64,000 nt of DNA, from the NCBI GenBank assembly GCA_904063045.1, contig CAJFCJ010000001.1, positions 3,348,001-3,412,000 on the forward strand. Direction: 5' to 3'. Origin of the DNA: Dimorphilus gyrociliatus. Its lineage: Eukaryota > Animalia > Annelida. The position numbers and the translations under genes were made by a program. Shown piece by piece: positions 25,501-57,600 of the stretch; position 1 is the stretch's first letter; every line of letters starts with the position of its first letter. The notes under the pieces were generated by a model. That model was not told the origin of the DNA, did not search any database, and saw only the letters and a list, made by a program, of their open reading frames with translations.

Positions 25501-25642
25501 TGGAAAGAAAGAATGTGTACAGTGCTGTAGAGGAGAAAGATGTAATACTTGGGAATTAGATGGTAAAGCAGGCGTGGCAGGATTATTTGCAGCCTGTTTC
25601 ATTATTGCTGTGTCTTGTATTCTATCCATTTTAATCAATTAA
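19581..25642 (+). CDS. Copy E: intact 11-exon cysteine-rich furin-like-repeat/Ly6 GPI-type surface protein, about 1,788 aa
   Basis: Exons 19581-19626 (MKNFFLLGLCAVVFQ), 19722-19853, 19913-20035, 20114-20314, 20372-21049, 21130-21759, 21823-21969, 22033-22149, 22213-24195, 24264-25217, 25287-25642. All introns GT-AG and phase 1; total 5,367 nt = 1,789 codons; ends CCRGERCNTWELDGKAG plus hydrophobic tail. Confidence 0.88.
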
Positions 25643-39965: not shown

Positions 39966-42900
39966 ATGAAGATATTTGACGGGATAATACTATTCTCCTT
40001 ATTAGTTCAGAGTATACAGTTTAAAAATACGAAAACTGCTTTGTTTGATATATACACATTCTGTTGTTTCTTCTTCAGTTTATTCAACTCAGGTAAACCC
40101 GTATAACATTTATAATTGTCTTGAAGATCAAACTGGAGCTGCTAATATCAAATGCGAAATTTGCTCTGCTGGAAAAATTCCTTCTGCCGATAAACTCGGC
40201 TGCTACGGTTAGTTTATTATCTTTTATTACAATGTAGAGAACATTCAATAATGCGTTTGTATTTCCCACTTCAACAATAGATTGTCCATCGCTTTGTAAG
40301 GTTGGAAAATGCGTTATAAGCAACAATTCTACTAAATGTACATCCTGTATTGATGGCTATACATTAAATTTACAGAAAACATGTATAGGTTAGATCTATT
40401 TAATTAATTAAATACGATATGAATTATATGTCTAAATATTGCCTTTATAGCTTGTGGTTCAAATTGTAAATCTTGTACTCTATTGGAGGATGGCAATATA
40501 GATTGTACAACTTGTTTTTCAAATAGTTATAAGGAAATTTCAAATTCAATTTCTCAATGTAAATTATGCTCTTCTTCCCTTACTGGATGTAAGGCTTGCT
40601 CTGATCAAAATACTTGTAATCAATGTCTATCTGGCTATACTCTATCAGACAGCAAATGTATATCATGCGCTAATATTCATCACGCTTGTATTGACTGCGA
40701 TGAAAAGAATCAATGCGTAAAGTGTAAAACAGGCTTCGTATTAAAAGACAATCTGTGTATAGATTGCCCTCGAAATTGTGATTCGTGCGAATTTGAAGAA
40801 AACTTTGTCAAATGTAACAAATGTAAAGCCTATCATACTAACGTAGGTAAAGTGAACTGCAATAATTGCCCTGATAATTGTCTGGAATGCGAACTTATCA
40901 ATGGAAATCTCGTATGTAAAGATGATAAATGTCTACCCAAATATGGTTTAACCGAAACTGGTTCTTGCAATAAATGCCCGGATAATTGTCTCTCTTGCTC
41001 GTGGAATAGAGTTAATTCAAGATTAGAGTGTAATGGTAATAGTATTATACATTCTTGCATTGAAAATGAACAAGGTAAATCGTGGGCTAGAAAAACTGAT
41101 GGAAGTTGTGTAGGTGAGTTATAATTAATATGGATATTTTCCATTTAACTAATGGATCTTTCTTCAAAAAGCTTGTCCAGAAAATTGTCTTAAGTGTTAT
41201 TTCAAGACTGATCAGTCTTCTTCTCCTATTTGCTATCCTTCTAAATGTAACATAAAATATGGATTTGACGATTCAACCTCAACTTGCTTTTCGTGTCCGT
41301 CGGGATGCGATTATTGTAAGAAGGTATCAACTGGAAATATCTGTCTTAAATGCAGCTTTGGATACGCTCCTAAATACAATGTCGGTAGCTCTACAATTGA
41401 ATCGTGCAAATCATGCTCAGCAGTAAATAATTGTGATTATTGCGAAGTTATTAACAACATAGTTAAGTGTTTAAGATCACCTTGCGCTTCAAAATCATCG
41501 GGACAAAATAGAAAGTTTTCTTTCAATACAAAACAATGTTCTGACAGTTGTCCTTCTGATTCGGGATGCAAAACTCAACAAAGTATTGTAGACGAAGGAG
41601 ACTATTGCTATTGTAGAGATTGTCCACTTGGTTCGGCTGTTATTCTATCAGGACAGAATAGTGGCGTTTGTAAATCTTGCGGTATAGATTGTATTGATTG
41701 TCAATTGACCGCCGATAAGACAGACGTTCAATGTAAAACTTGCAGAGGAACAAAACAATATATTGCAGTTTTTGATGGTTCAAATACAATTTTTGGATGT
41801 TATGGTTTGTTAAATACATTAGAATACAAGAAATTACGTATATTTATATATTTTCTGTCTTAGATTGTACGAATGTTAGACAATATTGCCATACACTAGA
41901 CATTTCAAGTGGATCTTGTAAATGTAAAAGCGACTCTTGCATTGGTGATTCATCTAATCCTACAAAGAAAACAGTCATATACGATTCTACTTCTGGAGTT
42001 TGTAAAAGTAATGATTTATTAAATATTAATATTAATAAACGTTTTATTTCCTTCTTATTTTTTCACCAATGAATAGGCTGTAGAGAAGTTGATCCTAATG
42101 GCCTATGGTGCTCGGGAAATTTCAATTCATTCACTTTGGATACTTGTATGGGTGGATACAAAAAGATAACTTCGCCAAGTCTTGTTTGTAGACAAATTCC
42201 TAATGGTTGCGCTAAATCTACTACAAATATTCCTGTTGGTGAAACTTATGTTCAATGTGAAATTTGTGGCCCTGGATACTATTTAGATCCATCGACAAAG
42301 AAATGCCCCTCGTGTAGTTCGGGTTCAGGAATTTCAGCGTGCGAAGAGTGCTTCTTAAAAACGTCGCCAAGCTCGCAAGTTGTTTGTACTAAATGCAGTA
42401 ATACTTCTCCGGGTGTTGGTTACAATTGTAATACTCCTTGTACAAGTTCAGTTGCTAATTGTGAAAATGGTAAATCTTGGGCACAAGATAATACTGGCTC
42501 AAATTGCGGATGTACTTCTTGTCTTTCTACTCATTCCAATACAGGCGGTGTACTTGCAACAAATAATGCTTATTCTGAGTCGTGTCTTTCAACTCTGAAT
42601 ACTCCTACTGTACCGAATTGCGCTACGTATTACGGCAATCCTGTAACTGGATGTAGCAAATGTTCGGATGGATATGCTTTTGCCAGCCTTGCCAATGGAT
42701 GCGTAGGTGACCCCGGTTATTCAAGTTCTTGTAAAAGTGGATATCTTTATTTTACGTCGGGAACCGACGTTGCCTGTGAAGTACCTTCTGAAAATTATAT
42801 GACAAATCCTGTCAGTAATTTACAGCCAATTCTAGTTGATCCTGCGGATAGAGCACCAACAAACGTTCCGTGCCTTTTATATTTGGGTTTAGGTGGTAGC

Positions 42901-45614
42901 ACGTCATCAGATGCAAGGTGTGCTCAGTGTCCATCAGGTTCGATTCTCTCTACAATTGCTGGAAATCTAATTACTAAATATACGTGCCAAACTTGTCCTT
43001 CCTTGTCAAATTGTGAGCTCGTTGCGTCACATAGCGGAAATTGTAGATGTGGTGCGTGTGGATCCAGTCCAGCTGGTAGTGTCAAATTAATATTACCGGA
43101 TAACAGTAACTGTAAAACTTGTGCAGTTATATCCAGTTGTTTAACGCATTCCCTCCGTCTAAAGGACGGCAATTACGAATGTGTTTGCTCACAATGCATA
43201 TTCGGAAAGCATTTATCAAAAGATTTCCTATCTTGCATTGATTGTTCTTCAATCACTTGTACTGGAGGAACTGTACAATTATCTAATGATAATTGTATTT
43301 GTTCATGTTCAAGTGGCAAACTTTTGAATAGAAATAATGATGGCTGTATCTCTTGTTCAAATTCAGAATTCACTGATTGCGTGCCAAATAGCTTTCTATT
43401 GAAACAAGATGACTCTTGCGATTGTTCCACTTGTCCACCATATAGTATTAAGAATAGAGCCAACAATAAATGTCTAAATTGCGCCGAACAAACCACAGGA
43501 TTTGTAGGGAATTGCTCAGTTTGCACAGAAAGTACATCAACACCTGATTCTATTGACGTTTGTAACGAATGTCAGGATGGTTTTTCGTTAAATAAAACCT
43601 CAAACACAGACAAAGGTAATTGTGTCGCTTGTGATAATGGATGCAAAACATGCAATATCGATTCATCTGGATCTACTGCAAATAAATGTACTAAATGCAA
43701 TGCTGGTTTTGCGTTGAACAATGCCGGCACTTGTCTCCAATGTCCAGAAAATTGTGGAGAGTGTAGAGTTGATACGAACAATAACTTGAAAACTTTATGT
43801 TTACAATTTGCCTGCTCAACTGGTGGACTTGTTGACAAAGATTTTACATGTGGATCTTGTCCTGCAAATTGCGCCAAATGTGTTAAAGATATATCCAACA
43901 ATGTAAAATGTCTAATATGTAATGATGCTACTTATTTAGATTCGGATGGATCATGCAAAAGTTGCATTAATGACTGTTCATTCTGTATTGATGGTGTAAG
44001 TTGTTTACCGAACGGTTGTAAAGATGGGTTTATCAGACATAGAACACAGGGAATTTGTATACAATGCTCTGGAGCTGGAGTTTCAAGATGCGTTTATCAG
44101 ACTATTCAAGATGATATTTTGATTCCAAAAACGTGTAAAGAAGGCTTCAAATTTAATGCAAATTTAAATCCAGATGCATGCGAAGGTTTGAATTAATTTC
44201 GATAAATTTCTGACTAATATTGAATTTTATTTTCTCTATTATTTTCAATAGAATGCGCTACAAACTGCAAAAAATGCGATTCATCGGGAAAGGGAAATTG
44301 CGATCCGAATGAATGCCGAGCTGGATACTTTTACGATTCAACAACTAGAAAGTGTTATAAAGTTAAAGAAGGGTGTCTTACATCTGCAAGATCTACTAAC
44401 GAAACAATATGCCAATCGTGTGACAAGTCCATTTCAGTGTTTAGTTCTGGACTGTGCAAAACGTGTCCTGAGGGTTGCGATGAATGTTTCGTTTCTTCGG
44501 AACAGACGATTTTGTGTAGATGGTGCAAAAAGCAGTATTATAGATTAGATAGCGGTCTTTGCTCTTCATGTCCAGAGGGATGTAAAGAATGCTTTATATC
44601 TGGTGGTAACGTAAAGTGTTCATCATGTTTGAATGAATACGCTTTGAATGGGCAATTTTGCACCAAATGTGTGGAAAGCAACTGTAACAATTGCGAAATG
44701 GATGGGAATTCTCCTGTTTGTAAAGAGTGCTTTAGTAAATTCTATTTGAATAATGAACAATGCGGAGAATGTCCAAAATTTTGTAGCGAATGCTCCTACG
44801 ATAATAAGTATGTGTGTAACAAATGCATTAAGAAGTATGCTAGAGATTCTAATGGTATTTGCGTTGCTTGCCCATCATCATGCGAAGAGTGTAGCGTTGA
44901 TGCTAACGATGTAGCTAAATGCTCAAAATGCGATTCTAATGCATTCTCTCTTCAACAAAATGGTACTTGTATATCCTGCAAGGAGGCTACCTTTTCTACG
45001 TGCGCTACGTGCGGTCCAGCAATTAATGGTAGTAAAGTGGAATGTTTGACTTGCGATAAAGGATACGGTCTTCAAGATGATAAATTAGCTTGTCTACCAT
45101 GTTCAATATCAAATTGCGATCTTTGCTCTCACGGTCGGCGATGTTCAAAATGCAAAGCAGGTTTCTATCTTCATAATTATGATAGAGAATGCGCAAGTAA
45201 GTAAATTATCTTCACAATGAAAAATATGTATTTATTAAATTAATGAATTTAGAAAAATGCTACGAATGTAAAGGAAGTCTAGATGACTGCGGAACAAATG
45301 ACCGTCATATTCTTGATGACGAAAGTAAAGTTAAATTAATTGACTGCGGTACTACAGATTGTTGGGTTCATCGGAGAGAAGTTAAAGGCGTTATAACATT
45401 CGAAAGAAGCTGTTCACACGAAGTTTGTACAGCAGATGCATTGAACGAAATTTGCTCGTCGAATAGCGATAGTAGAGAATGTAAAAAGTGTTGCAAAACG
45501 ACGAAATGCAATTCTTGGTTTTTAGACGGTAAAGCCGGTGTTAATAGGCTTAACCAATCCTATTTAACTTTAATATTGTCTATTATTTTCAAATTAATAA
45601 CCTCATTTAAGTGA
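39966..45614 (+). CDS. Copy F: divergent intact 9-exon member of the cysteine-rich furin-like-repeat/Ly6 GPI-type family, about 1,712 aa
   Basis: Exons 39966-40011 (MKIFDGIILFSLLVQ), 40079-40207, 40281-40388, 40451-41113, 41172-41804, 41864-42007, 42077-44185, 44252-45196, 45253-45614. All introns phase 1; total 5,139 nt. Shares family motifs (SWARKTDGSCVG, FIRHRTQGICI, GFYLHNYDRECA, CCKTTKCNSWFLDGKAG plus hydrophobic tail). Confidence 0.85.
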
Positions 45615-46040
45615 TGTTGAAGAGAGAATTTTCAATATCTTATCGATACTTGAAGATAAGAGGGTACAATGGTACTCTTTCCAAAATGTGTTACACGTTA
45701 TACTTGTTTATCTTATATCATGACATTAAGAGGTTCAAGTATAATCTTTTCTCTTCTCGTAGCAACTGATGTCTACGTTGATAACGTAATACAAAGCTAT
45801 GACTTTTGACAGAGTTTGTTTATGAACTGTAGGATTACGAATACTGAAGAGAAGATAAGCTTCAGCTAATGAAGATTTTGAATATTTATTCTAAATTCAC
45901 AAAGTGTAATACTCTTGTGTAATAAGAACTTTCTATTCAATTTCATTGTAGGGCATAATAGAAAGACACTTGACAATGAAAATACATCGTTATAAGTATT
46001 AGTAATGTTCTCTTATTCTTGTCTTTAAGTACCATTTTCT

Positions 46041-47471
46041 TTATGATAATATTTTATGATAAATATCTTTAGGTAAAGTAGACTTTAGATTGTCATACTC
46101 TACTCCTTCAATATCGAACATGATCTTTGATTTCGGAATATTACTCTCTTCCGCCCTTTCGACTATCTGGTCTTTAAATTTACAAATGGCAGATGAAAAT
46201 CCTAGACGCTTTGTCTGATATTCATCGGATGATTCAATACCAATTATCCATATCATTTCATTATTACCCAATTCTGAATTGAATGAATCTGGTAGAACTC
46301 GAATTTTGTCTACATGCGTCAATTCTGATAGATATTTCAAGAAGAAATGAATACTACCGCTGATTAGACCGGCGAAGTCTTGTTCAACGCTTTTTGCAGC
46401 CGTTGCTCTTAGTAACAGGAAATATTTGAAAGCAGTAAAAAATGGGTCTGCTTTTACTAGACTTAACCAATCATCTTGGCCTTTCAGAATTCTCTTTGTA
46501 ATTAAATTTCCATTTCTTAATTCGGACATTATAATTTTAAGGCTGGATTTCGAAACATTATAAGCACAGTTCCTCCGAGGAGAAGTTGGGGTTAAAATTG
46601 GCATTATTTGCGATCTGGCTATACGATTTACTGTACTCCAATTGTAAGTTAGGAATCTTCTGGGTACTGGAATACTAGCTTTGATGGTGACTGGTTTAGG
46701 CCATGGCCAATTGTGAAAGGTTTCAAAAAATTTGGCAACTAGTGTTGAAGCGTCAGAACTAGGATATAATTGATTTATGTATACTAGTAAAATAGTCCAC
46801 GAAACGCCACCAAGAAATCCATACTTGGCATAATAAATCTTTTTTCCTTTAGCCCATAGTTTGATAGCACGTAAAGCGATTCCGAATTCTTCTTTTCTAG
46901 CTATACTTGCGTATATATCGTTTGCAACTTGATAACTATGTACGTTTAACATACTTGGTTCATCCAACTTGTAGTAAATATCAGAGCTTTGTAAAGATTC
47001 GGCACGAGACAAATCTCTAATATTGACGTTTGCATAAACTAAATTCAATTTAACGCCTTTATAAGTGAGTAAAAGAACTGGTATAAGCGTCTTTGGAATT
47101 TTTCTCATAGACGTTACGTCTCGTAACTGTTGAAGTTTAAGAGAAAAAGACGAAAAGAAAGTTGTAATAGGGATATTCTCCGGTGCCATACAAATTAAAT
47201 CCATATTTGAATCTTCTTCAATAAACCCAAGAGCATACGATCCAAAAGGATAAACAAACTTTTCAACAGAATGTAATGAAGATTTTGAATAAGATGACGA
47301 CTCTTCCAGTAGCCACTCTTTGACATGACTATTCATTTCTTTCAAAATTTCATCTCTCTTCCTTACATTTTCTATAGAATCAAAATAACCAAGTTTTGAT
47401 AAAGTGTCCTTTAAATTTAAATCCTTAAAATCTTCAGATACGTCATTTTCTCCATTGCTTCTCGAAGCCAT
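46041..47471 (-). CDS. Poly(A) polymerase-like protein 1 (PAPOLA/PAP1 family, intronless, 476 aa; catalytic Asp substituted)
   Basis: PAP motifs FGSYALG, ALRAIKLWAK, GFLGGVSW, WPWPKPV and MPILTPTSPRRNCAYNVS. The DxD site reads NMD and the third Asp position reads N. Confidence 0.85.
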   Translation of the reverse strand: MASRSNGENDVSEDFKDLNLKDTLSKLGYFDSIENVRKRDEILKEMNSHVKEWLLEESSSYSKSSLHSVEKFVYPFGSYALGFIEEDSNMDLICMAPENIPITTFFSSFSLKLQQLRDVTSMRKIPKTLIPVLLLTYKGVKLNLVYANVNIRDLSRAESLQSSDIYYKLDEPSMLNVHSYQVANDIYASIARKEEFGIALRAIKLWAKGKKIYYAKYGFLGGVSWTILLVYINQLYPSSDASTLVAKFFETFHNWPWPKPVTIKASIPVPRRFLTYNWSTVNRIARSQIMPILTPTSPRRNCAYNVSKSSLKIIMSELRNGNLITKRILKGQDDWLSLVKADPFFTAFKYFLLLRATAAKSVEQDFAGLISGSIHFFLKYLSELTHVDKIRVLPDSFNSELGNNEMIWIIGIESSDEYQTKRLGFSSAICKFKDQIVERAEESNIPKSKIMFDIEGVEYDNLKSTLPKDIYHKILS

Positions 47472-47776
47472 ACTTCAAAAGACAATGTAATTTCTGAAAT
47501 GTAAAATTTAAGCGTATTTGTACAAAGCCGAAATGAAAGTAAAAACAATGCTTAACTCTTAATGGTTGGAAAAACCACCAAGTTAAATGATCCAATTTCA
47601 TATAAAATACATTCTTTTATTGTTTATTATAAATAAAATAAATAATAGAAATAATCTAATTCTACATGTATATTGAAACAAAAGAATTAACAGACTTTAT
47701 CTAGTTCAAATATATAAATAACTGACTTTTGGGGAAATATCCTCAAAACAGGAAAAACATTACATTTACGACAATA

Positions 47777-49201
47777 TCAATTAAGATATCTTTCGAAAAG
47801 TTGATCATAAGCATCTTGGGGTAGAAATGTAGATAATTCTTCGTGTCTGATCGTTGAAACGTCAATTTCAATGTGATTCCTTTCCATCGGAATCTCTTCT
47901 ATTTTCTCAAAAATGGTTCGATTAAAATCATCAATATATGGTCTTAAATAGTTGGCTACAGCTTCTATTGAATCTGTCGTTTTAATACCAATAATCCATA
48001 TTCTACGTTCATCGTTGATAGTCGAATCAAACGAATATGGTAGGGCTTGAACTCTCCTGATGAAATTTTTCGTTTTCGAATCATCCAATTTATTTGTTAA
48101 TACCTTAATTTTGGATTCTATTACAGAGTAAGTTTGGGTTCTGTAGTTTTCGATGGTGTTACCAGTTATTACGATAAATTGCTCATATTTATCAAAGAAA
48201 CGATTCGGTTCAAAGAGAGCTGTCCAATCCCCATTCCTATCTACAATCTCTTTGCAAATAGTGAATCCTTTCTGAAATTCTTCGACAATTAGAGATTTCG
48301 TAGATCTAGTTATACGAAATGCCGAGTTGTTTCGAGGAAAAGATGGAGTCAGAATTGGCATTAAGGCATTTTTATCTCTCGCCAATCTTGATACTTCAAA
48401 GTCGAAAAGTTTTAAATTCTTCACATAGACGTTTTTGCCGATAAACTGTTTGATTTCAACTGGTTTAGGCCAACTCCATTCACGGTAAATGTTGAAAAAT
48501 TGATAAATCAATTGAGAAGGTGAAGCTGTAGGAAACCTTTGACAAATGTAAACGACTAGAATTGTCCAAGAAGTTCCACCCATAATTCCAAGTCTTCTGC
48601 TATAAAAGCCTTTCTGCTTTGCCCATAATTTAATAGCCCTTAGAGCTATCTGGAAAGTTTGTCTATTCGGAATAATCTTTAAAATATCTTGAATAATATG
48701 ATAACCATTCAAACTTATAGCATTTTGGAAATTCATTCCTTCATAAGCATTAGGATGACTAATATTTTTTCTCCCAGTTAAATATTCAATAGGAACGTTG
48801 GAAAATGATATAAACAATTCCGTATCATCTAAAATAAGTCGGATTTGGGGAGTTCGGCAAACTCCTACTGCGATTACTTGCTTCACATTTGGATATTGCT
48901 GAAGTTTTGTGGAAAATAATGTTAAAAAGTCCTCCAAAGAAATAAACTGGGGAGCAATGAAGATTGTATCTAACTTTGAATCTTTTTCCATTACTTCCAA
49001 AACATAGGATCCTAATGGATAGATATACTGCTTTATAGCTTTAATTGCAGTTTTTCTGTCCTCATTATCTTCCACCATTTCCATTATCCATTCCTTAGCT
49101 AAACTTTTAACATTGTTTATTAAAGTAGATCTTTTTGACCTCTCATTCTCCGATTCATAGTGTCCCACTTCAATTAGGTATGTCTCCAAACTAGTTGACA
49201 T
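47777..49201 (-). CDS. Poly(A) polymerase-like protein 2 (intronless, 474 aa; catalytic Asp substituted)
   Basis: LGSYVLE, SLNGY, ALRAIKLWAK, MGGTSW, WSWPKPV and MPILTPSFPRNNS. The DxD site reads KLD and the third Asp position reads F. Confidence 0.85.
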   Translation of the reverse strand: MSTSLETYLIEVGHYESENERSKRSTLINNVKSLAKEWIMEMVEDNEDRKTAIKAIKQYIYPLGSYVLEVMEKDSKLDTIFIAPQFISLEDFLTLFSTKLQQYPNVKQVIAVGVCRTPQIRLILDDTELFISFSNVPIEYLTGRKNISHPNAYEGMNFQNAISLNGYHIIQDILKIIPNRQTFQIALRAIKLWAKQKGFYSRRLGIMGGTSWTILVVYICQRFPTASPSQLIYQFFNIYREWSWPKPVEIKQFIGKNVYVKNLKLFDFEVSRLARDKNALMPILTPSFPRNNSAFRITRSTKSLIVEEFQKGFTICKEIVDRNGDWTALFEPNRFFDKYEQFIVITGNTIENYRTQTYSVIESKIKVLTNKLDDSKTKNFIRRVQALPYSFDSTINDERRIWIIGIKTTDSIEAVANYLRPYIDDFNRTIFEKIEEIPMERNHIEIDVSTIRHEELSTFLPQDAYDQLFERYLN

Positions 49202-50099
49202 GATAAAGCGCTAAATCTTTATATCACCAGAAAACTATTTGATATTTGAATGACAAAGAACTCTAGCCTTATATACTAATTTATTGCGTCATAAAAACAT
49301 TCAATTTTTATGAACATTTCTAAATATAGGTATAGAAATAAGTGTATTTTACAAGTTTCAGTTTCCTATTGTTGTTATCTCATCAGGTGATTTAGGGAAA
49401 CACAGTTTTCTATAGAATCTATAGATTTCAATTGGAATGTTTTATTGGTAAGATTAATAACAATGATTAAAATAAATAGGAATTTGCTTTTTACGGAGAT
49501 AATCAATCTAATAGATTATTGGTTATTAAATTATATTGTCGTGATTTTAACTTTTATTTCTCGTTGTTTAACTTGATCTCTGATCCTTATCTTTCGAAAC
49601 CTAATAATTCATCTAATCATTATGTCACAAAGTTTATCTAGTTTCAATTAATATTTAGATGGACAGTCGGAAATTTTTGCTTTTTCACGCGTATGAAATA
49701 GAAATTGACAAAGAAATATGGCTTTTAAAACCTGATATTAATATTCTTACAACTTGAATAGTAATTGTTACATAATTTCGTAAAAGCCCTGTTTTAAACT
49801 GTTTATTTTTAGAATAGATGCTCTACGGTATGACATCAGACAAAACTAATATATGATCATTATCAACTTTTCAATATACATACAACGAAACAGTAGTGAT
49901 ACAAGAATCAATAGAGAAAACGCCAGATTTTGACGCCAGACGTTTATCCAAAAGACTACTCTGTCTGTAAAAAGCAGGGACAGTGCCACAAAAACCGGAA
50001 GATTAATTAATATGTTTATTAATGATAACTCTACCGATATAATCATACTTCTTGTTTTATTTTAACTCTATTATCTAATATAATCTTATCAAATTTGAA

Positions 50100-51560
50100 T
50101 CAAAATATTTCAGAAATGATATCTTCAGGTAAAACGCTTTCTAATTCATTTGTATCTTGATTCTCAATACTAAAGATGATGTCTTTGGATAGTCGAGCTT
50201 CGGCGATCTTACTCTGAACATCTTTTGAAAATGCATCGAGTAAACGATCAAATTCGTCGCTATCGTGACTGTACGAATTTCGTTTATATCCAATAAACCA
50301 ATACCTTTCCTCAGTCGAATATGAATCATAATATTTTGGACACAAATGCGTTTCCTGCACTCGATATAAATTATCTATTTTCTTAACAAGTACTAAAATC
50401 CTCGATTCGAGTAAATCAATCCATTTCGTTAGGTTCATTTTCATATTTGTTGAAGTTTTAACAACCATAAATGTCGAGTAGTTGTCAAAAAAATTGAATG
50501 ATTCAAATAGATTATCCCATGATAATTTCCCTGCTACAATATCTTCCATAATTTCCGATGCTCTCTCCATTTCCTTTAAAATGATACTTCTTGTCGATTT
50601 CGTTACTGCACTAGTTAAATTTTGCTGAGGAAAGGCTGGAGTAATGATTGGCATGAAATCTACAACATTCCTTTTAGGTAGTGGATCCCATTCGGTTAAT
50701 TTTGATTTTTTCATCGCAATACCTACATCAATATTCTTAATTTTTACCGGTAAAGGCCATTTCCAGGTTGCAAATTCTTTAAAGAATTTACTCAATAGTA
50801 TTCCAACAACGGCATTCTCATTCGATTGACATATTTTAAGTAATAGAATTGTTAATGACATTTCTCCCAAATATCCATATTTACTATTGTCAAGACCTCG
50901 GTTTTTAGCCCATAGTTTAAGGGCGGAAAGAGCTAAATTGAAATTTTCCAGTTGTGTTATACACTGCAAAATAGCCTTAGCAATATGATAGCCATGAAAA
51001 CTCAAACTGCTTTCTTTATCCATTGTATTATATATGGATACATTATCAATACTTTTATTTCCAAGTAAAAAGCTCACCTCCACATTAGAAAGGAATAGAT
51101 TAACATGGACATCAGAATAGTAGAAAGATATTACGGGAACACTACTTTTTGTAATTAACGCTAATTCTCTCACCTTTTGTAAAGAGTCAAGTTTACTTGC
51201 AAAGGCTTTGAAAAATTGGTCACGGCGAATTTCTCTCGGCGCAAGACATAACAAGTCTAGAGTTGAAGTTTTTTCAACAACGCCCAAAGTAAATGATCCC
51301 ATTGGTTTAATGAAATTTTGAACGCTTCGAATAATTGTAAGAATATCTGGCTTTTCCGTAAGACTACTATGATACCAAGTTCTAAGAAATGAATTAATTG
51401 CTCTAATAACCCAATTTCTCTTAAACTTTTCGCAATCCGAATTGCCGTAGCCATTTTCGCGAAGTGTATTTTCTAAGTCACTCATACAATTGAATTCCTC
51501 TTCACTAGGAAACTCTCTACCAATTATTTTTCTTTGCGTATTAGATCTCGTATCAGTCAT
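50100..51560 (-). CDS. Poly(A) polymerase-like protein 3 (intronless, 486 aa; catalytic Asp substituted)
   Basis: MGSFTLG, ALSALKLWAK, WKWPLPV and FMPIITPAFPQQNLT. The DxD site reads TLD and the third Asp position reads N. Confidence 0.85.
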   Translation of the reverse strand: MTDTRSNTQRKIIGREFPSEEEFNCMSDLENTLRENGYGNSDCEKFKRNWVIRAINSFLRTWYHSSLTEKPDILTIIRSVQNFIKPMGSFTLGVVEKTSTLDLLCLAPREIRRDQFFKAFASKLDSLQKVRELALITKSSVPVISFYYSDVHVNLFLSNVEVSFLLGNKSIDNVSIYNTMDKESSLSFHGYHIAKAILQCITQLENFNLALSALKLWAKNRGLDNSKYGYLGEMSLTILLLKICQSNENAVVGILLSKFFKEFATWKWPLPVKIKNIDVGIAMKKSKLTEWDPLPKRNVVDFMPIITPAFPQQNLTSAVTKSTRSIILKEMERASEIMEDIVAGKLSWDNLFESFNFFDNYSTFMVVKTSTNMKMNLTKWIDLLESRILVLVKKIDNLYRVQETHLCPKYYDSYSTEERYWFIGYKRNSYSHDSDEFDRLLDAFSKDVQSKIAEARLSKDIIFSIENQDTNELESVLPEDIISEIF

Positions 51561-52163
51561 TTTCTCTCGTTTGTCAAGTGAACTCGCCTTCCCTTCGTAT
51601 ACGTAAGAATATTGTTTATTTCTTTTTGAGATTAAATATATAAGTTAACCATAAAAAATATCTAATTATCTTTCAGATTAGATACAAGACGTCTCTTTAT
51701 ATGCTGTCATTTATTAAGAAATTATCAGTTTTGATGAATTTTATCATTTCTTTTCAAATTATTATTTTCTTCCTCAATTCATCATTCCAATGAATAGAAC
51801 AAAGAGAAAATTATCAATATTCTTCCATCTTTTGATGATATATTTTCTAGTTTTTCTCCTATTGATAGACAATATCAATAAATATAATAAGTAGGTCTAT
51901 ATATGGTTTATTTTGCTTGAGCTTTCTTGCTATACATAGATCATAATTATCTGAATAGATAACAAATTATTTCCTCTTATCTATTCATATTAATTAATAA
52001 GACCATATATAATTTCTGATCATAACTATTAGCCTATACTATATACAGTATATAAAATCACCTCTTCAAACGAGGTTTAGTCATTATGGAATGATATTAG
52101 TATATATGTGTATTGGTAATTATAATATTATTCTCGTATTCATTTCAAAATTTCAAGTTTTCT

Positions 52164-53615
52164 TCACTCTACTGCAATGATTTTATCATAAACATCTTTA
52201 GGTAAAGATCTTAATTCTTTACGCTCCGAACAGGAAACTTTCAGATCAACATCGGCCCTCTCTACGCCCACTTCATCTAGTTTAGCCAACGTAGTATTTT
52301 CAAACATATCAACGTGTGGTAGTAAGTCAGTAGGGAAATTGTCCTCTAGTTCTTCCATTTTTATACCAATAAACCATATTCTACATTCATCGTCGATAGT
52401 CGAATCAAACGGATTTGGTAAGACTTGAAGAGTCTTAAGGAAATCCTCTTTTTCCAAATCTCTTGTTAATACTCTAATTTTGGATTCTATTACAGAGTAA
52501 GTTTTGCTTCTGTAGTTTTCGATGGTGTTACCAGTTATTACGATAAATTGCTCATATTTATCAAAGAAACGATACGGTTCAAAGAGAGCTGTCCAATCCC
52601 CATTCCTATCTACAATCTCTTTGCAAATAGTGAATCCTTTCTGAAATTCTTCGACAATTAGAGATTTCGTAGATCTAGTTATACGAAATGCCGAGTTGTT
52701 TCGAGGAAAAGATGGAGTCAGAATTGGCATTAAGGCATTTTTATCTCTCACCAATCTTGATACTCCAAAGTCGAAAATTTTTAAATTCTTCACATAGACG
52801 TTTTTGCCGATAAACTGTTTGATTTCAACTGGTTTAGGCCAACTCCATTCACGGTAAATGTTGAAAAATTGATAAATCAATTGAGAAGGTGAAGCTCTAG
52901 GAAACCTTTGACAAATGTAAACAACTAGAATTGTCCAAGAAGTTCCACCCATAATTCCAAGTCTTCTGCTATAAAAGCCTTTCTGCTTTGCCCATAATTT
53001 AATAGCCCTTAGAGCTATCTGGAAAGTTTGTCTATTCGGAATAATCTTTAAGATATCTTGAATAGTATGATAACCATTCAAACTAAAAGCAGTACGTGAA
53101 TCCATATTCCCATAAATATTTGGTTGATAAATATCGTTTTCACCGTTTAAATAAGAAACGTCCGGATTAGTAAAAGTTAAACCGACTTCAACATCAATGT
53201 ATAGAGCTTTGATAGTTATATTTCGAGCTATTTCTATTGGATGTATTTCTTTTACGTTTGGACATTGTTCAAGTTTTTTTGCAAAACTGTTCAGAAAATC
53301 ATCTATGCTTATGAAACTTGGAGCTATGAAGACTAGGTCTAAATTTGAGTCTTTTTCCATTACTTCCAAAACATAGGATCCTAATGGATAGATATATTGC
53401 GTTATACCATTAATTTTACTTTTTCTTTCCTCATTATCTTCCACCATTTCCATTATCCATTCCTTAGCTAAACATTTAATTTCATCAATTATGGTAGATC
53501 TTATCAATCTACTTTCGTCTATCGATTGATAACATTCTTTATTTGATAGAAAATCTTCTAAATTCTCCGATGTTTGCCTATCTCTTTCGTGTTCATACTT
53601 AATTTCACGAGACAT
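52164..53615 (-). CDS. Poly(A) polymerase-like protein 4 (intronless, about 483 aa; catalytic Asp substituted)
   Basis: LGSYVLE, SLNGY, ALRAIKLWAK, WSWPKPV and MPILTPSFPRNNS. The DxD site reads NLD and the third Asp position reads G. ATG at 53615 (the ORF track starts at an upstream GTG). Confidence 0.85.
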   Translation of the reverse strand: MSREIKYEHERDRQTSENLEDFLSNKECYQSIDESRLIRSTIIDEIKCLAKEWIMEMVEDNEERKSKINGITQYIYPLGSYVLEVMEKDSNLDLVFIAPSFISIDDFLNSFAKKLEQCPNVKEIHPIEIARNITIKALYIDVEVGLTFTNPDVSYLNGENDIYQPNIYGNMDSRTAFSLNGYHTIQDILKIIPNRQTFQIALRAIKLWAKQKGFYSRRLGIMGGTSWTILVVYICQRFPRASPSQLIYQFFNIYREWSWPKPVEIKQFIGKNVYVKNLKIFDFGVSRLVRDKNALMPILTPSFPRNNSAFRITRSTKSLIVEEFQKGFTICKEIVDRNGDWTALFEPYRFFDKYEQFIVITGNTIENYRSKTYSVIESKIRVLTRDLEKEDFLKTLQVLPNPFDSTIDDECRIWFIGIKMEELEDNFPTDLLPHVDMFENTTLAKLDEVGVERADVDLKVSCSERKELRSLPKDVYDKIIAVE

Positions 53616-54625
53616 CACGAATGGGAAAATTTCGATTGTATTGCAGAAGAATGAAAACCGGTTACCAACTAATTGTTTTGTTTATTAAAAGGAAGTTTTA
53701 GTTTTTTCCTACTATAATAAATGAGACGTTTAAGCTAAGGCTCTAAACAATATTTGAACAAACCTGAAAATGTAAATGTTCCGCTTTTATCGGGAGTCTA
53801 GAGAGTGTTATGCAAAATTAAACCCCAACTGATGTACTTGTATACTATGAGATTTACGACTCATTTTTAGTAAGACCCGCCTGTAGGTTGTAACCGGTTT
53901 GAATTTACGTTGCCAAGCTTCAGGGTGGGCGAAATTTTTATATGAATGCTCTAAAATGACATACACTCTTTCTATTATGGAATTTTTCTGATATTTCTAC
54001 TTTCAGATTCGATTTTTGGCTGTATCGCTACAACTGAAATATTTACTGCAGCCTTTTTATCGGCGATCTAAAACAGGTGTTGTGTTTAAAGCCTATCTAG
54101 TGTTGCAATATAATAGCCTATTACACAGTTCAATTATGCATAAAAAATGCTTGAATATTTAGCGATTTTGCAAAGTTGAACTTTTAATCTTGTAATGTTA
54201 ATCCCTTAATATTATGACTAAGAATATCCTCATTTCCATTATACTTTTCAACGTGATAAAACTATTGATAAAGTGGCCTATCCCGTCAATACTTGCGTTA
54301 TAACAAAGTAAGAAGAGAAAAACAAAGAAGAGAAGAAAGAGTACACTTTAAGGTTCTCTCTCTCTCTCTCTCTCTCTCTCTTTATATATACTGTATATTT
54401 GATATATAGAGGATTTGATTCAAGTTGGACAGTCAGGAAATAGTAGAGAGCTGTTGAAAAGAATTTCTTCTGCAATATAATTTGTATTGATTTTTCAGGT
54501 CACCTTTTATTTTATTGAAATGAATAGAATATACTCCTTACTATCCTTTCGCGGATCAATGGTTTTTCACTAAGTAATAACCATTCTTGTACCTTATAAC
54601 TGCGGTCTACTTACAAAACGAGAGA

Positions 54626-57600
54626 ATGGCGTTCGAAGTTAGGGATTCTGGTGATTTTTTATTAGACCTATTAAATCAGAAACTCATCGAAGATCAGTTA
54701 TTACTTCTCGGAGAACTTGGTATTCGTTATTCAAATGAAAACATTCAATATTTCTATCGCATTAGATATTTGGATAATCTCTTTCAAAAATGCTCTGATC
54801 TTGACCTTAATCAATACTTTTATGATTATTTCTCTTCTTTTCAATCAAAATGTAATGGCGAACGTGTAGAAGAGGTCTTTGAAGGAACCGAAAATGATAT
54901 TAAATTTTCGTATTTAGCAATATTCCTAAGTGATGAGGAAATAGAAAATTTATACTATAAACATTTATACAATTATGGAGAAGACGCTCCATTTCAACCG
55001 ATTGACGATGAAAGCGTTCATTGGTCACCCGTAAAAACAATGAAGATTTTAGAGAGATGGATGTTCGGTGAAGATATCCGTAATAAATTCGATTACAATG
55101 GTCTCATCAAGCTTTTTATTAAAAAGTTCAATTCTATTGAACAAAGGTTAATATTGGTTTCTTTTCTTCTCTTCTTCAATAACCAAAAAAACAACAATCA
55201 ATCAAAACTAAACTAGTTGTTTTTTCTCTTTTATCCTCAATAGGAAACTTGCTTGTTTGGATGCAAAACTAAATGAAAGATGCGGTTAGTATCTATTCAT
55301 TTATCGTTGTTTTATCTCTATTAATTCAATGATATCTTCTTCTTCTTCTTCTTCTTGTAAAGAATTGAACAAATTTATTACGGATTTAAAAAACAAGTAC
55401 ACTTCCGCCTACTACGATCTGCCAATTTTAACGAATAAACATCCAAAGACAAAGAAAAAGGCCTATCAGATTCAAACTGAAATTTTGTGGAAAATTCAAA
55501 AAAATGATTTCAACAAAAATAATGAACTTGAAATTTGGTCAAATTTTCAAAGTTTAATTAATAATTATGAACATTTCATTACGAAGAAAACTGGTAGAGT
55601 CTTAATGGAAGGACAAATTGGTTCTGGTAAAAGTTTATACGTTCATTATATGATGAATATGTGGGCGAAAGGAACTGTGTTGAAAGATATCGATTTGTGC
55701 TTATACTTTGATTTCAGTCGGATTGATTCAAACCAAACATTAGAGAGATTATTTATTCAGCAAACATTCCCAGAATTTTCAAGGGAGCAACAAGATTTCT
55801 ACTCTACTCTTCTTCAACGTTTTATACGCAAATCACCTTCAAAAGTCCTATTACTTTTCGATCAGCTTGACCATTATTATTTCAATAATCACCAATTAAA
55901 CGAAATACTAGAAGAAAAATCCCGAACTCCCATCATAACATGGTGTAGAAATGTTAAGGCAAAGGATATAAAAGATACTTATCATTGTGTTATTGAATTA
56001 TTAGGTTTCAATCTGTTACAATTTACGATCTATTTACAGAAATGTTTCAATGAACTTGAAATTATTGATATTGAATCATCTTACGAACATTTTAAAAATT
56101 CCTTTGGCTTGGCAAAATTATCGAAAGAATATCTAAGGAGTTTGACAGATGAAGTTGAACAATTTCAATTATTTAGATGTTCATGTTTGTCAACTCTACA
56201 AAATCTCTCCATTATAGTATTTAAACAAATACCTCAAAGTCTTGAACATCAATTTGGCCGTTACGATTTAATGGAAGAAAGAAATTCTCCTCTATTTATG
56301 GCATTAACCTCCTTGTATTGTTTGCGTGAGGAAGAGGATGATAATTGTCGATTTAAGACCGATTTTGGATTATATCAATATTATATTCAAAGTTCATCTA
56401 CAAGATTTAAGGAAATACTCGAAAACAAAGTTGGAAGGTTGTTAATCAATGATTTGAACGGAATAGACTTAAATTTCAATGATAATCTATCAATTGAAGT
56501 CATTAAAGAATTCTGTTCTTATACAAATAATCTTGTTTACTATTCTCAAGTTTTCAACACGAGAACTAATACAGAAAGAATTGTTATTGAATTCCTTCAT
56601 CCAACAGTTAAAGAGTATTTATTGGCTTTATACATTACTCAAATATTTCAAAAAGACAACCAATCTTTTAATATACTAATTGCAGATGGATATAAATTTC
56701 ATAATTTATCAAAAATGTGGAAGATTTTCCAATATATCGGTGGAATTGATGAAGAATGTTTAAAAGTTATATTATATAATATTGAAAAAGAGTTTTTCGA
56801 AGGAGTAAACAACGTTCACGAAGAGACTTTTAATCGTTTTAATACACTTGTAAAAGGTTCTCTATGTCGTATCAACGATGAAATATGGAAAAGATTCTTC
56901 TATTCAATCCTAAATTATACTGCAAAAATCAATTTAAAATCTATTTTAAGCTCTTTTAATTCAACGTTTAACGATATTATCTTGAGAATTCCTACCGATG
57001 TTCAATTGTATTTCAACGATCAGGAAGATGAGTTGATTTTTGATGGAATAGGAAATTTACTTATTCAAACTGGTGGCTTGAATAATCATCAATTAGAACT
57101 TTTAATGAAATGTAAACATTTGAAATGTATTAAAATTATTGATGTTCAAGTTGATAATGTTGCTTTATACGAATTGAAAGAGAATTCATTGAAAACACTC
57201 GAGAAATTGGTCATTGGACAAACTATCATAGATTGGAAAATATTATCATCCGTTGGTACGTTCCTTTCTTTTATCTTATCTTAATTAAATCTCTAAAGTA
57301 ATATTTATTACGCAGACGGAGATTTACTCTTATCGGATCTTCATTTATGCAAACTATTACTTACCGATAATACAATGAATTTTATATCTAAAGCCATTCA
57401 TTTACAACATTTAACAATTCATCCATCGTCAGATTATACTCAAAACGCTTTGACTATAGAACTACTTTATACACTTGCTACTGTGAACACATCATTGAAA
57501 TCTCTTTCTTTATTTGGACTAGATGTTGAATCTCAGCATCATCTCTATGACAACTTTTTCTTTTCAATGCAATCGTTCAAAGAGCTAGTTGATTGTCATT

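What the first reader, a model, noticed from the sequence alone, without database searches (positions are those of the whole stretch)
46041..53615. Tandem array of four intact but apparently catalytically dead poly(A) polymerases
Four same-strand, uninterrupted 474-486 aa ORFs keep the PAP fold motifs (GS loop, LWAK, WxWPxPV, MPIxTP). Aligned to the canonical FGSYRLGVHTKGADID...EIDILFA, all four have lost the first Asp of the DxD (N, K, T, N) and the third catalytic Asp (N, F, N, G); only the middle Asp is retained. In the pol-beta nucleotidyltransferase family these three carboxylates bind the catalytic metals, so loss of two should abolish polymerisation. Different substitutions in each copy while the ORFs stay intact suggest selection for a non-catalytic role, such as RNA-3'-end or ATP binding, a decoy for viral or transposon RNAs or inhibitors, a dominant-negative regulator, or a scaffold in 3'-end processing. 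They also lack the long S/T-rich C-terminal tail of vertebrate PAP. I am not aware of a described pseudo-PAP array. Caveat: three copies have an Asp two residues upstream (DSxxD) that might partly compensate.
Basis: partly seen in the sequence, partly recalled or inferred. Interest (0 to 1): 0.88.

Follow-up and report, generated by a model that had tools for sequence, protein, structure and literature searches.

The report
Expressed family of dead poly(A) polymerases
The miniature marine worm Dimorphilus gyrociliatus carries four neighbouring, intron-free, transcribed copies of the enzyme that adds poly(A) tails to mRNA; all have lost the metal-binding residues needed for catalysis but have stayed intact over a long time, so they most likely act as non-catalytic binders, a pseudo-enzyme I could not find described for this enzyme family.

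Summary
Window 46041-53615 (minus strand) of the Dimorphilus gyrociliatus assembly holds four intact, intronless genes of 476, 474, 486 and 483 aa. All have the three-domain fold of canonical poly(A) polymerase (PAP). An AlphaFold2 model of copy 4 has pLDDT 93 and TM 0.86-0.89 to bovine PAP.

Gapless HMMER alignments to bovine PAP give these residues at D113/D115/D167:
- c1: N/D/N
- c2: K/D/F
- c3: T/D/N
- c4: N/D/G

In about 145 other PAPs these positions are D in 141-151 cases.

Two more members lie in tandem at the syntenic locus of an unidentified relative. Their triads are S/D/Y and D/N/K. All six lack the third Asp and keep exactly one carboxylate of the DxD pair.

The genes are not decaying:
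- Their frames are open although synonymous sites are saturated.
- The codon-model omega is about 0.19.
- Transcript-like contigs cover all four genes. They are collinear with the genome, and for c1-c3 end just after AATAAA.

They evolve several-fold faster than canonical PAPs. c2 and c4 share a gene-conversion tract. All four lack the NLS and S/T tail.

Most likely they are non-catalytic binders of an RNA 3' end or a nucleotide. The actual role is untested. I rate this a new variant of a known kind (a nucleotidyltransferase-fold pseudoenzyme).

The parts
46041..47471 (-). c1: intronless pseudo-PAP gene, 476 aa. Triad N89/D91/N143 (codons 47205-47207, 47199-47201, 47043-47045).
   Evidence: ORF. 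Pfam PAP_NTPase and PAP_central. Alignment to 1f5a/4lt6. A 1635-nt transcript-like contig reaches 47493 at its upper end; its laid part (46700-47493) has no differences, and by its length it would end near 45859.
47777..49201 (-). c2: intronless pseudo-PAP gene, 474 aa. Triad K76/D78/F130 (codons 48974-48976, 48968-48970, 48812-48814).
   Evidence: Exact transcript-like contigs 47603-48168 and 48653-49010 in run X5.
50100..51560 (-). c3: intronless pseudo-PAP gene, 486 aa. Triad T100/D102/N154 (codons 51261-51263, 51255-51257, 51099-51101). It has also lost Y237 (to D).
   Evidence: Contigs of 1844 and 1876 nt span 49776-51619 and 49762-51635 without differences; a 222-nt contig lies on c3 in a coral metatranscriptome.
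52164..53615 (-). c4: intronless pseudo-PAP gene, 483 aa. Triad N/D/G (codons 53343-53345, 53337-53339, 53181-53183).
   Evidence: AF2 pLDDT 93.4. Foldseek TM 0.86-0.89 to 1f5a/4lt6. Highest word depth of the four.
48139..48722 (-). Gene-conversion tract in c2 (central domain, about codons 161-355). It is 97-100% identical at nucleotide level to c4 at about 52508-53091, while the flanking codons 101-160 and 401-468 are only 51-53% identical.
   Evidence: Sliding-window comparison. c4-derived contigs cross-map here with 10 differences in 584 nt.
45885..45890 (-). AATAAA poly(A) signal of c1, about 30 nt upstream of where the 1635-nt transcript contig would end by its length (about 45859, outside the laid stretch).
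47616..47628 (-). Two overlapping AATAAA signals of c2, 18-25 nt upstream of the contig end at 47603.
49802..49807 (-). AATAAA signal of c3, 31-45 nt upstream of the contig ends at 49776 and 49762.
55329..57284 (+). Context only: a divergently oriented neighbour ORF with a NACHT domain.
   Evidence: Pfam NACHT, E 1.3e-10.
40360..45608 (+). Context only: cysteine-rich (furin-like/VSP-like repeat) gene block flanking c1. It is the synteny anchor to the relative's locus L002.
   Evidence: tblastn and blastn of L002 against the window give 40-64% aa and 66% nt identity. Pfam.

Best explanation
The four genes are a lineage-specific family of pseudo-enzymes derived from the canonical nuclear poly(A) polymerase.

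Origin (inferred). An intronless copy, probably a retrocopy, lost the third catalytic Asp in an ancestor shared by D. gyrociliatus and a related worm. The gene was then duplicated in tandem. The copies diverged very fast, each lost one Asp of the DxD pair, and c2 and c4 keep exchanging their central domain by gene conversion.

What is shown:
- PAP fold and three-domain architecture.
- Absence of two of the three metal ligands in all six known members.
- Absence of everything C-terminal to the core.
- Long-term ORF maintenance.
- Transcript-like contigs collinear with the genome for all four genes, ending just after AATAAA for c1-c3.

What is inferred:
- They cannot polymerise.
- They still bind something in the old active-site cleft. 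The GS loop, K228, K232, Y237, the MPIxTP loop and exactly one DxD carboxylate are retained. The likely ligands are an RNA 3' end and/or a Mg-nucleotide.
- Without the C-terminal NLSs they probably act in the cytoplasm, as non-catalytic readers or occluders of RNA 3' ends that compete with tailing or deadenylating enzymes.

I put about 0.8 on 'selectively maintained, expressed, catalytically dead PAP paralogues' and about 0.3 on the specific 3'-end or nucleotide binder mechanism.
For: Fold and family:
- Pfam hits for all three PAP domains.
- phmmer E 1e-62 to 1e-80 to PAP alpha and gamma structures.
- AF2 pLDDT 93.4 and pTM 0.93.
- Foldseek TM 0.86/0.89, rmsd 2.7 A to 1f5a.

Dead triad:
- Gapless alignments.
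- Of 55 positions that are at least 90% conserved in 87 canonical PAPs, 25 are kept in all six members. D167 is kept in 0/6, D113 in 1/6 and D115 in 5/6.

One origin:
- The six form one side of a 100/99 branch against 24 other PAPs.
- They share family-specific residues beside the catalytic strands and elsewhere: L114, L116, N172, Y190, Y204, I214, T250.

Maintenance:
- The syntenic tandem pair P0007/P0079 sits next to the same cysteine-rich genes in another species. Those neighbours are 40-64% identical, so the split is old.
- dS is saturated in all pairs except c2/c4.
- NG86 omega is 0.17-0.62 and ML GY+F3X4+G4 omega is 0.19.
- There are no stops in frame against 15-58 in the other frames.

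Expression:
- Three runs from the same study as the genome give one-gene contigs with short UTRs.
- Depth is zero in the c2-c3 spacer (49300-49699) in all three runs, in the c1-c2 spacer in two of them, and low in the c3-c4 spacer.
- No splice joints are seen.
- For c1-c3 the 3' ends lie 18-45 nt after AATAAA (the c1 end inferred from its contig length).
- An independent coral metatranscriptome holds pieces of c3 and c4.

Binding without catalysis is plausible: the yeast PAP-ATP-oligo(A) crystal 2q66 carries Ala at the third Asp, where wild-type 2hhp has Asp. A PAP without that residue can therefore still hold both substrates.

The aspartate triad as metal and ATP ligand, and the C-terminal NLS1/NLS2 plus S/T region, are described in PMC6309179.
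Against: - No biochemical assay exists. Inactivity rests on homology to mutational work on bovine and yeast PAP, which I recall from memory.
- Some substrate-contact positions are also gone: N239 in 0/6, R205 in 0/6, N202 in 4/6, and Y237 lost in c3. Adenine-specific or primer binding may therefore be lost as well.
- Pseudo-to-pseudo identity (25-41% per domain) is no higher than pseudo-to-canonical identity. No strongly conserved new surface is evident that would point to a shared new ligand.
- omega comes from saturated data. The monophyly branch joins long branches, so long-branch attraction is possible.
- Runs X4-X6 are labelled 'DNA?' by the tool. Treating them as RNA-seq is my inference from contig size and coverage pattern and from the stage-specific RNA-seq described for that project.
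- Cytoplasmic location is inferred only from the missing C-terminus.
Confidence: 0.7

Rival explanations
1. The proteins are still polymerases or other nucleotidyltransferases. They would use the remaining Asp plus nearby acidic residues (D111 in c1, c2 and c4; E165 in c2 and c4) or a one-metal mechanism.
For: One carboxylate of the DxD pair is kept in all six members. K228, K232 and Y237 are kept in most. Acidic residues sit two positions before the lost Asps in some copies and would face the same side of the strand.
Against: - No compensating acidic residue is conserved across the family. c3 and P0007 have neither D111 nor E165.
- D111 (22 of about 150) and E/D165 (about 100 of 150) are common in PAPs that also need the full triad, bovine PAP (E165) among them. 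They are therefore not substitutes.
- The residues at position 167 are G, N, F, N, Y and K, which looks unconstrained.
- A yeast PAP with Ala at this position was what was crystallised with intact ATP and oligo(A).
Confidence: 0.08
2. They are non-catalytic partners or decoys for proteins rather than RNA. They could be a prozyme-like activator or a dominant-negative competitor of the canonical PAP for 3'-processing factors such as Fip1 or CPSF.
For: Dead paralogues that regulate their active counterparts are well documented, for example trypanosomatid AdoMetDC and DHS prozymes (PMC5201418 and PMC3663545, listed). The C-terminal RNA-binding domain, which in yeast carries the Fip1 site (entry 3c66), is retained.
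Against: - The regulatory tail and NLSs that mediate many PAP partner contacts and nuclear import are missing.
- The C-terminal domain is the fastest-evolving part, at 25% identity among members. That fits poorly with a conserved partner.
- Canonical PAP is not known to work as a dimer (from memory).
Confidence: 0.12
3. They are fast-evolving sensors or decoys in a host-parasite conflict (viral or transposon RNA). The model is inactive OAS-family proteins in tandem arrays.
For: - Tandem array, very fast protein evolution (end branches 2-5.5 substitutions per site against 0.1-0.7 for canonical metazoan PAPs) and gene conversion.
- The immediate neighbour is a NACHT-domain gene.
- The genome paper reports that the few expanded families in this species are mostly locally duplicated immune genes (PMC7854359).
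- All three differences seen in an independent metatranscriptome are non-synonymous: c3 E336K, c4 H434L and T441I.
Against: - Overall omega is below 1, and no site-level positive selection could be tested with six saturated sequences.
- Adjacency to one NACHT gene is weak evidence.
- No infection-related expression data exist.
- The family is not named among expanded families in the text or held supplements of the genome paper.
Confidence: 0.12
4. They are transcribed but functionless relics (processed pseudogenes that happen to remain open).
For: They are intronless, have lost catalytic residues, evolve fast, and c2/c4 omega is about 0.55.
Against: - Six ORFs of 455-493 codons are open at saturated synonymous divergence, in a 33% GC background where a stop is expected about every 13 codons.
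- Synteny is conserved across a deep species split.
- Fold-critical motifs are invariant.
- The AF2 model is very confident.
- ML omega is 0.19.
Confidence: 0.04

Closest known systems
Canonical poly(A) polymerases alpha and gamma (bovine 1F5A/1Q78, human 4LT6)
   Same: Same three-domain fold: NTase, central and RNA-binding domains. About 30% identity, TM 0.86-0.90. The GS loop, K228, K232, Y237, WxWPxPV and MPIxTP are retained.
   Different: Two of the three catalytic Asps are missing in every member. There are no NLSs and no S/T-rich tail. The genes are intronless. Protein evolution is several-fold faster.
PAPOLB / TPAP, the intronless testis-specific PAP of mammals
   Same: An intronless paralogue of canonical PAP with a shortened C-terminus and cytoplasmic or tissue-specific use (cited in PMC6309179).
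   Different: PAPOLB is an active polymerase with an intact triad (from memory). It is a single gene, not an array. Tissue specificity of the worm genes is unknown.
Nucleotidyltransferase-fold pseudoenzymes: MiD51/MiD49 and the DZF domains of NF45/NF90
   Same: A pol-beta-type NTase fold without catalytic residues, used for ligand or partner binding. MiD51 binds nucleotide; NF45/NF90 dimerise and bind RNA through other domains (PMC3926961, PMC3467086).
   Different: There is no close sequence relationship, and they are not among the top 50 Foldseek matches. Those families are ancient and widespread. This one is a recent, lineage-restricted offshoot of the canonical PAP itself and keeps all three PAP domains.
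Yeast Pap1 with Ala at the third catalytic Asp (PDB 2Q66)
   Same: An engineered counterpart: the third Asp is replaced, yet the protein was crystallised with ATP and oligo(A).
   Different: It is a laboratory point mutant that retains the DxD pair. The worm proteins have additionally lost one DxD Asp and N239.
Uncharacterised teleost 'PAP-like' proteins with degenerate triads (Cheilinus undulatus XP_041672040.1, D/D/G; Synchiropus splendidus XP_053713822.1, E/D/N)
   Same: Canonical-PAP paralogues lacking the third Asp, found among the 150 best representatives.
   Different: They are unrelated lineages and single genes, longer (658 and 1305 aa), and keep one more carboxylate. Nothing shows that they are expressed or maintained. 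In the tree they sit with the other PAPs, not with the worm family.

Membership tests
Canonical poly(A) polymerase (Pfam PAP_NTPase + PAP_central + PAP_RNA-bind) | Three-domain architecture and fold | tested here: met
   Pfam hits in all four genes; PAP_RNA-bind is above its cut-off only in c3 and c4. The AF2 model of c4 matches 1f5a/4lt6 at TM 0.86-0.90 over about 465 columns.
Canonical poly(A) polymerase (Pfam PAP_NTPase + PAP_central + PAP_RNA-bind) | Catalytic aspartate triad (bovine D113, D115, D167) | tested here: not met
   N/D/N, K/D/F, T/D/N and N/D/G in c1-c4; S/D/Y and D/N/K in the relative's two genes.
Canonical poly(A) polymerase (Pfam PAP_NTPase + PAP_central + PAP_RNA-bind) | C-terminal NLS1/NLS2 and S/T-rich regulatory region (metazoan nuclear PAPs) | tested here: not met
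   The proteins end about 5-15 residues after the last aligned residue of the crystallised core (bovine about 501, PAP gamma about 508). Canonical hits are 600-850 aa. No K-K/R-x-K/R motif at the C-terminus.
Canonical poly(A) polymerase (Pfam PAP_NTPase + PAP_central + PAP_RNA-bind) | Polyadenylation activity | not testable with these tools
   Needs a recombinant protein assay.
Pol-beta-like nucleotidyltransferase superfamily | Signature hG[GS]x9-13Dh[DE]h plus a third carboxylate on a later strand | tested here: not met
   G-S is invariant in 6/6. The DxD/E motif is broken in 6/6 and the third carboxylate is absent in 6/6.
NTase-fold pseudoenzymes (concept; e.g. MiD51, NF45/NF90 DZF) | NTase fold retained and catalytic carboxylates lost, yet the gene is maintained and expressed | tested here: met
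   Fold. Loss of carboxylates. Maintenance. Transcript-like contigs.
NTase-fold pseudoenzymes (concept; e.g. MiD51, NF45/NF90 DZF) | Demonstrated non-catalytic ligand or partner binding | not testable with these tools
   Only indirect: triphosphate-contact residues are retained, and there is the precedent of 2q66.
Retrogene-derived PAP paralogue (PAPOLB-like) | Intronless coding region derived from a multi-exon parent | tested here: inconclusive
   Transcript contigs are collinear with the genome and show no joints. The multi-exon canonical PAP of the same genome is known only from untested earlier notes s1-080846 and s1-083348. No retroposition hallmarks are left.

The most novel reading that the evidence does not exclude
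A dedicated family of catalytically dead canonical PAPs acts as cytoplasmic readers or caps of RNA 3' ends, possibly of poly(A) tails themselves. It would occupy the 3' end with the old active-site cleft and so modulate tailing, deadenylation or decay. That would be a new class of 3'-end-binding protein, evolved from the enzyme that makes the tail and possibly deployed in germline or embryonic mRNA control or in conflict with foreign RNA.
Probability: 0.25. Interest if true: 0.8.

Novelty: new variant of a known kind. Interest (0 to 1): 0.62.

Why it matters
Pseudoenzymes are known in many enzyme families, including the nucleotidyltransferase fold (MiD51, NF45/NF90). Three literature searches here found no described pseudoenzyme derived from the canonical mRNA poly(A) polymerase.

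This case is clean. There are six members in two species, all with a broken triad in different ways. They have been kept open across a deep split, and the four in this genome are transcribed. The family is a natural experiment on what a PAP scaffold can do without catalysis.

Binding to RNA 3' ends or to nucleotide can be tested directly with recombinant protein. Dimorphilus gyrociliatus is a culturable annelid with a 74-Mb genome and existing stage-specific RNA-seq, CAGE and ATAC data.

It also has an annotation consequence. These genes carry all the PAP Pfam domains, so pipelines that name genes by domain content could label them as active polyadenylate polymerases.

Tried and rejected
- The bacterial-type promoter and terminator scan of 45700-54600 was no better than shuffles, and it is irrelevant for an animal genome.
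- Rfam found no RNA family anywhere in the window.
- I looked for the canonical PAP of the same genome with a word-based search using a sea-cucumber PAP. The result was swamped by vertebrate and echinoderm PAPs, and no D. gyrociliatus entry was among the 120 listed. The by-sequence look-up of earlier findings was blank. The presence of a canonical PAP therefore rests on two untested earlier notes.
- A word-based search with a profile of the six members found no further family members.
- I could not identify the relative's species. No paper cites the three run accessions.
- A literature search for the yeast D154A mutant gave nothing. I resolved this by reading the 2q66 and 2hhp chain sequences in HMMER alignments; a first attempt was out of frame, and a shorter fragment did not reach the site.
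- The genome paper's held supplements do not mention PAP or adenylyltransferase.
- The look-up of sequencing runs was busy three times before it answered.
- Model coordinates are not exposed, so I could not measure distances for possible compensating carboxylates.
- I considered and rejected the idea that c2 and c4 are simply young duplicates. Their flanks are as diverged as any other pair.

Full report
ORGANISM AND LOCUS
The window is part of contig CAJFCJ010000001.1 (3.6 Mb) of assembly GCA_904063045.1. A comparative-genomics paper lists that assembly as Dimorphilus gyrociliatus (PMC10212961). This is the miniature annelid with a 73.8-Mb genome described in PMC7854359. The window is about 31% GC.

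THE OBSERVATION
Four minus-strand ORFs lie head to tail with spacers of 305, 898 and 603 bp:
- c1, 46041-47471
- c2, 47777-49201
- c3, 50100-51560
- c4, 52164-53615

The public annotation calls them as single-exon genes of 476, 474, 486 and 483 aa. tblastn finds no other copy or fragment in the 64 kb.

All four hit Pfam PAP_NTPase and PAP_central strongly. They hit PAP_RNA-bind weakly or moderately. Their best solved relatives are human PAP gamma and bovine PAP alpha, at E 1e-62 to 1e-80. The copies are only about 31% identical to one another, except c2/c4 at 68%.

An AlphaFold2 model of c4, built on a 94-sequence alignment, has mean pLDDT 93.4 and pTM 0.93. It superposes on 1f5a, 1q78 and 4lt6 with TM 0.86-0.90 and rmsd 2.6-2.8 A over about 465 columns, covering all three domains.

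THE CATALYTIC RESIDUES
The HMMER alignments to bovine PAP are gapless from the invariant G-S loop through the DxD strand and through the strand carrying the third Asp. The residues at D113/D115/D167 are:

| Copy | D113 | D115 | D167 |
|---|---|---|---|
| c1 | N | D | N |
| c2 | K | D | F |
| c3 | T | D | N |
| c4 | N | D | G |

(codon coordinates.)

In a MAFFT alignment with the 150 best-scoring representatives from a 1.8-billion-protein library, these columns are D in 141, 151 and 144 sequences. Most exceptions are this family.

I then took the 55 positions that are at least 90% conserved in 87 canonical PAPs:
- 25 are kept in all six family members. They include G-S, K228, W230, A231, the GxxGG loop, WxW-P and P-T-P-P.
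- D167 is kept in none, D113 in one and D115 in five.
- N239 and R205 are also lost in all six.
- K232 and Y237 are kept in five.

The review PMC6309179 states that the aspartate triad coordinates the metals needed for catalysis and ATP recognition. That single Ala substitutions of these residues inactivate bovine and yeast PAP is from my memory of the primary literature.

It applies to c1, c2 and c4. However, Asp at that position occurs in 22 of about 150 PAPs that have full triads, and it is absent in c3 and in one gene of the relative. It is therefore not a family-wide substitute. The same holds for E165, which bovine PAP itself carries.

THE FAMILY EXTENDS BEYOND THIS GENOME
An exhaustive HMMER search with a profile of the four proteins returned 4896 PAP-like proteins. 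Only two scored like relatives of this family: P0007 (493 aa) and P0079 (455 aa). Both lie in tandem on Logan contigs from three runs (SRR23372229, SRR23372216, SRR23372231).

Next to them on that contig lie genes that match the cysteine-rich block flanking c1 in the window (40360-45608). The match is 40-64% at protein level and 66% at nucleotide level, in the same relative order and orientation. This is therefore the orthologous locus of a fairly distant, unidentified relative.

Its two PAP-like genes are only 27-36% identical to c1-c4. Their triads are S/D/Y and D/N/K. So:
- All six known members lack the third Asp, with five different replacement residues.
- Each keeps exactly one carboxylate of the DxD pair.

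In a maximum-likelihood tree the six form one side of a branch with 100/99 support against 24 other PAPs. Their end branches (other than c2 and c4, which share a 2.3 stem) are 2-5.5 substitutions per site, against 0.1-0.7 for canonical metazoan PAPs. Long-branch attraction therefore cannot be excluded.

Independent support for a single origin comes from shared family-specific residues: Y204, I214 and S405 in 6/6, and L114, L116, N172, Y190 and T250 in 5/6. Several of these flank the catalytic strands.

The simplest history has two steps. The third Asp was lost once in the common ancestor. The DxD pair then degenerated separately in different copies.

A word-based search with a six-member profile found no further members.

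ARE THE GENES MAINTAINED?
- Synonymous divergence is saturated for every pair except c2/c4 (dS 1.5-3.9). NG86 omega is 0.17-0.62.
- A codon model (GY+F3X4+G4) on the six genes gives omega 0.19. These values are soft because of the saturation.
- ORF integrity needs no model. Each coding frame has no stop, while the other five frames have 15-58. By base composition a stop is expected about every 13 codons, so an open frame of this length has a chance probability of about 1e-16 to 1e-18 per gene.
- Together with conserved synteny across a deep split, this excludes drifting pseudogenes.
- Constraint is nevertheless much weaker than on canonical PAPs. Per-domain identity among members is 26% (NTase), 41% (central) and 25% (RBD). 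Among ten canonical metazoan PAPs the figures are 65%, 78% and 57%.

c2 AND c4 ARE A MOSAIC
Codons 161-360 are 97-100% identical at nucleotide level, with almost no synonymous differences. Codons 101-160, which include the D167 position, and codons 401-468 are 51-53% identical with saturated dS. c4-derived contigs cross-map onto c2 at 48139-48722 with 10 differences in 584 nt.

This is the signature of gene conversion of the central domain between old duplicates. It is not the signature of a recent duplication.

EXPRESSION
Only runs kept as Logan contigs were available. Three runs (X4-X6) come from the same 2020 study as the DNA run that probably gave the assembly. On the stretch 46700-52699 they show the following:
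- A 1635-nt contig reaching 47493 at its upper end. It covers all of c1 that lies in the laid stretch, and by its length it would end near 45859.
- 1844-nt and 1876-nt contigs for c3 (49776 or 49762 to 51619 or 51635).
- Several exact pieces for c2 and c4.
- Zero depth in the c2-c3 spacer (49300-49699) in all three runs, zero in the c1-c2 spacer in two of them, and low depth in the c3-c4 spacer.
- No splice-like joints apart from the paralogue cross-mapping.

The tool labels these runs 'DNA?'. I read them as the stage-specific RNA-seq of the genome project for three reasons:
- Their total contig size is 30-41 Mb.
- The contigs are gene-sized.
- Depth is zero or low in the spacers between the genes.

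PMC7854359 describes two replicates of four female life-cycle stages. This reading is an inference.

An independent library that is recorded as RNA, a coral metatranscriptome (X1), holds a 222-nt piece of c3 and a 161-nt piece of c4. All three listed differences in those pieces are non-synonymous: c3 E336K, and c4 H434L and T441I.

Stage, sex and tissue specificity could not be addressed.

WHAT IS MISSING FROM THE PROTEINS
All four end within about 5-15 residues of the last residue aligned to the crystallised cores, at bovine about 501 and PAP gamma about 508. Canonical metazoan PAPs in the searches are 600-850 aa.

The region that carries NLS1, NLS2 and the phosphorylated S/T-rich tail (PMC6309179) is therefore absent. 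No classical basic cluster occurs near the C-termini. A cytoplasmic location is plausible but untested.

MECHANISM
The proteins keep a confident PAP fold, the G-S loop and most of the triphosphate-contacting residues. The attribution of K228, K232 and Y237 to triphosphate contacts is from memory of the bovine ternary-complex work. They also keep one DxD carboxylate and the MPIxTP loop, but have lost the rest of the metal site.

A direct precedent shows that such a protein can still hold substrates. The chain of PDB 2q66, titled 'Yeast Poly(A) Polymerase with ATP and oligo(A)', has Ala where wild-type 2hhp has the third Asp.

My best reading is therefore a non-catalytic binder of an RNA 3' end and/or a Mg-nucleotide, probably outside the nucleus. 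It could compete with tailing or trimming enzymes.

Weighing against a simple 'ATP plus primer' binder:
- N239 and R205 are lost in all members.
- N202 and Y237 are lost in some.
- No strongly conserved new surface is visible.

The alternatives are a protein-partner decoy or activator, a conflict-driven sensor or decoy, residual catalysis, and functionless relics. They are listed with their evidence under rival explanations.

The context is worth noting but proves nothing. A NACHT-domain gene lies immediately upstream and is divergently oriented. The genome paper says that the few expanded families in this species are mostly locally duplicated immune genes.

COMPARISON WITH WHAT IS KNOWN
By descent and fold these are canonical-PAP paralogues. 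They fail the defining enzymatic feature, so they should not be filed as poly(A) polymerases.
- They resemble mammalian PAPOLB/TPAP in being intronless and C-terminally short. PAPOLB, however, is active.
- They resemble MiD51 and the NF45/NF90 DZF domain in being NTase folds without a catalytic site (PMC3926961, PMC3467086). They are unrelated to these in sequence.
- Two annotated teleost 'PAP-like' proteins also lack the third Asp: Cheilinus undulatus XP_041672040.1 and Synchiropus splendidus XP_053713822.1. Degenerate PAP paralogues may therefore arise sporadically, but I found nothing published on them.
- Three full-text searches for inactive or pseudo-PAPs returned no description of such a family. 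That is absence in one library, not proof.

CANONICAL PAP IN THE SAME GENOME
Two earlier first-stage notes report multi-exon PAP loci elsewhere in this genome:
- s1-080846: a 12-exon divergent PAP without a tail.
- s1-083348: a PAP tail built from triplicated NLS-bearing exons.

I could not reach those loci with the tools. The point stays untested here.

VERDICT
This is an expressed, selectively maintained, lineage-restricted family of catalytically dead canonical-PAP paralogues. It shows tandem duplication, rapid divergence and gene conversion. I rate it a new variant of a known kind (NTase-fold pseudoenzyme or PAP retrogene). Interest is moderate to high, because the function is open and can be tested directly.

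Noticed in passing
window 377-1596, 2937-8094, 20371-25615, 27283-32196, 40444-45608: Five paralogous blocks of cysteine-rich (furin-like/VSP-like repeat) coding sequence, in both orientations. The block next to c1 is the one syntenic with the relative's locus L002 (61% aa identity for the largest ORF). These ORFs are probably exons or neighbouring genes of a segmentally duplicated family.
   Followed up: partly
window 55329-57284 (+), with ORF 54587-55216 (+) just upstream: A NACHT-domain ORF (Pfam E 1.3e-10) is divergently oriented from c4. It suggests an NLR-like gene directly beside the pseudo-PAP array.
   Followed up: partly
window 50512-50733 and 52232-52392: A coral metatranscriptome run (X1) contains short contigs about 99% identical to c3 and c4, so a D. 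gyrociliatus-like worm was present in that sample. All three listed differences are non-synonymous: c3 E336K, c4 H434L and T441I.
   Followed up: partly
L002:672-4420 (Logan contig SRR23372229_27442; also L003 and L004): An unidentified relative carries at least two tandem pseudo-PAP genes (493 and 455 aa). The contig starts 671 bp upstream of the first, so the array may be longer. The species could not be identified.
   Followed up: partly
proteins P0029 and P0033 (not in the window): Annotated teleost PAP paralogues with degenerate triads: Cheilinus undulatus XP_041672040.1 (D/D/G) and Synchiropus splendidus XP_053713822.1 (E/D/N, 1305 aa). These may be independent pseudo-PAPs.
   Followed up: no
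window 53615-53618: The mechanical ORF for c4 starts at a GTG (53618). The annotated protein, and the likely start, is the ATG one codon downstream (53615), giving 483 aa.
   Followed up: yes
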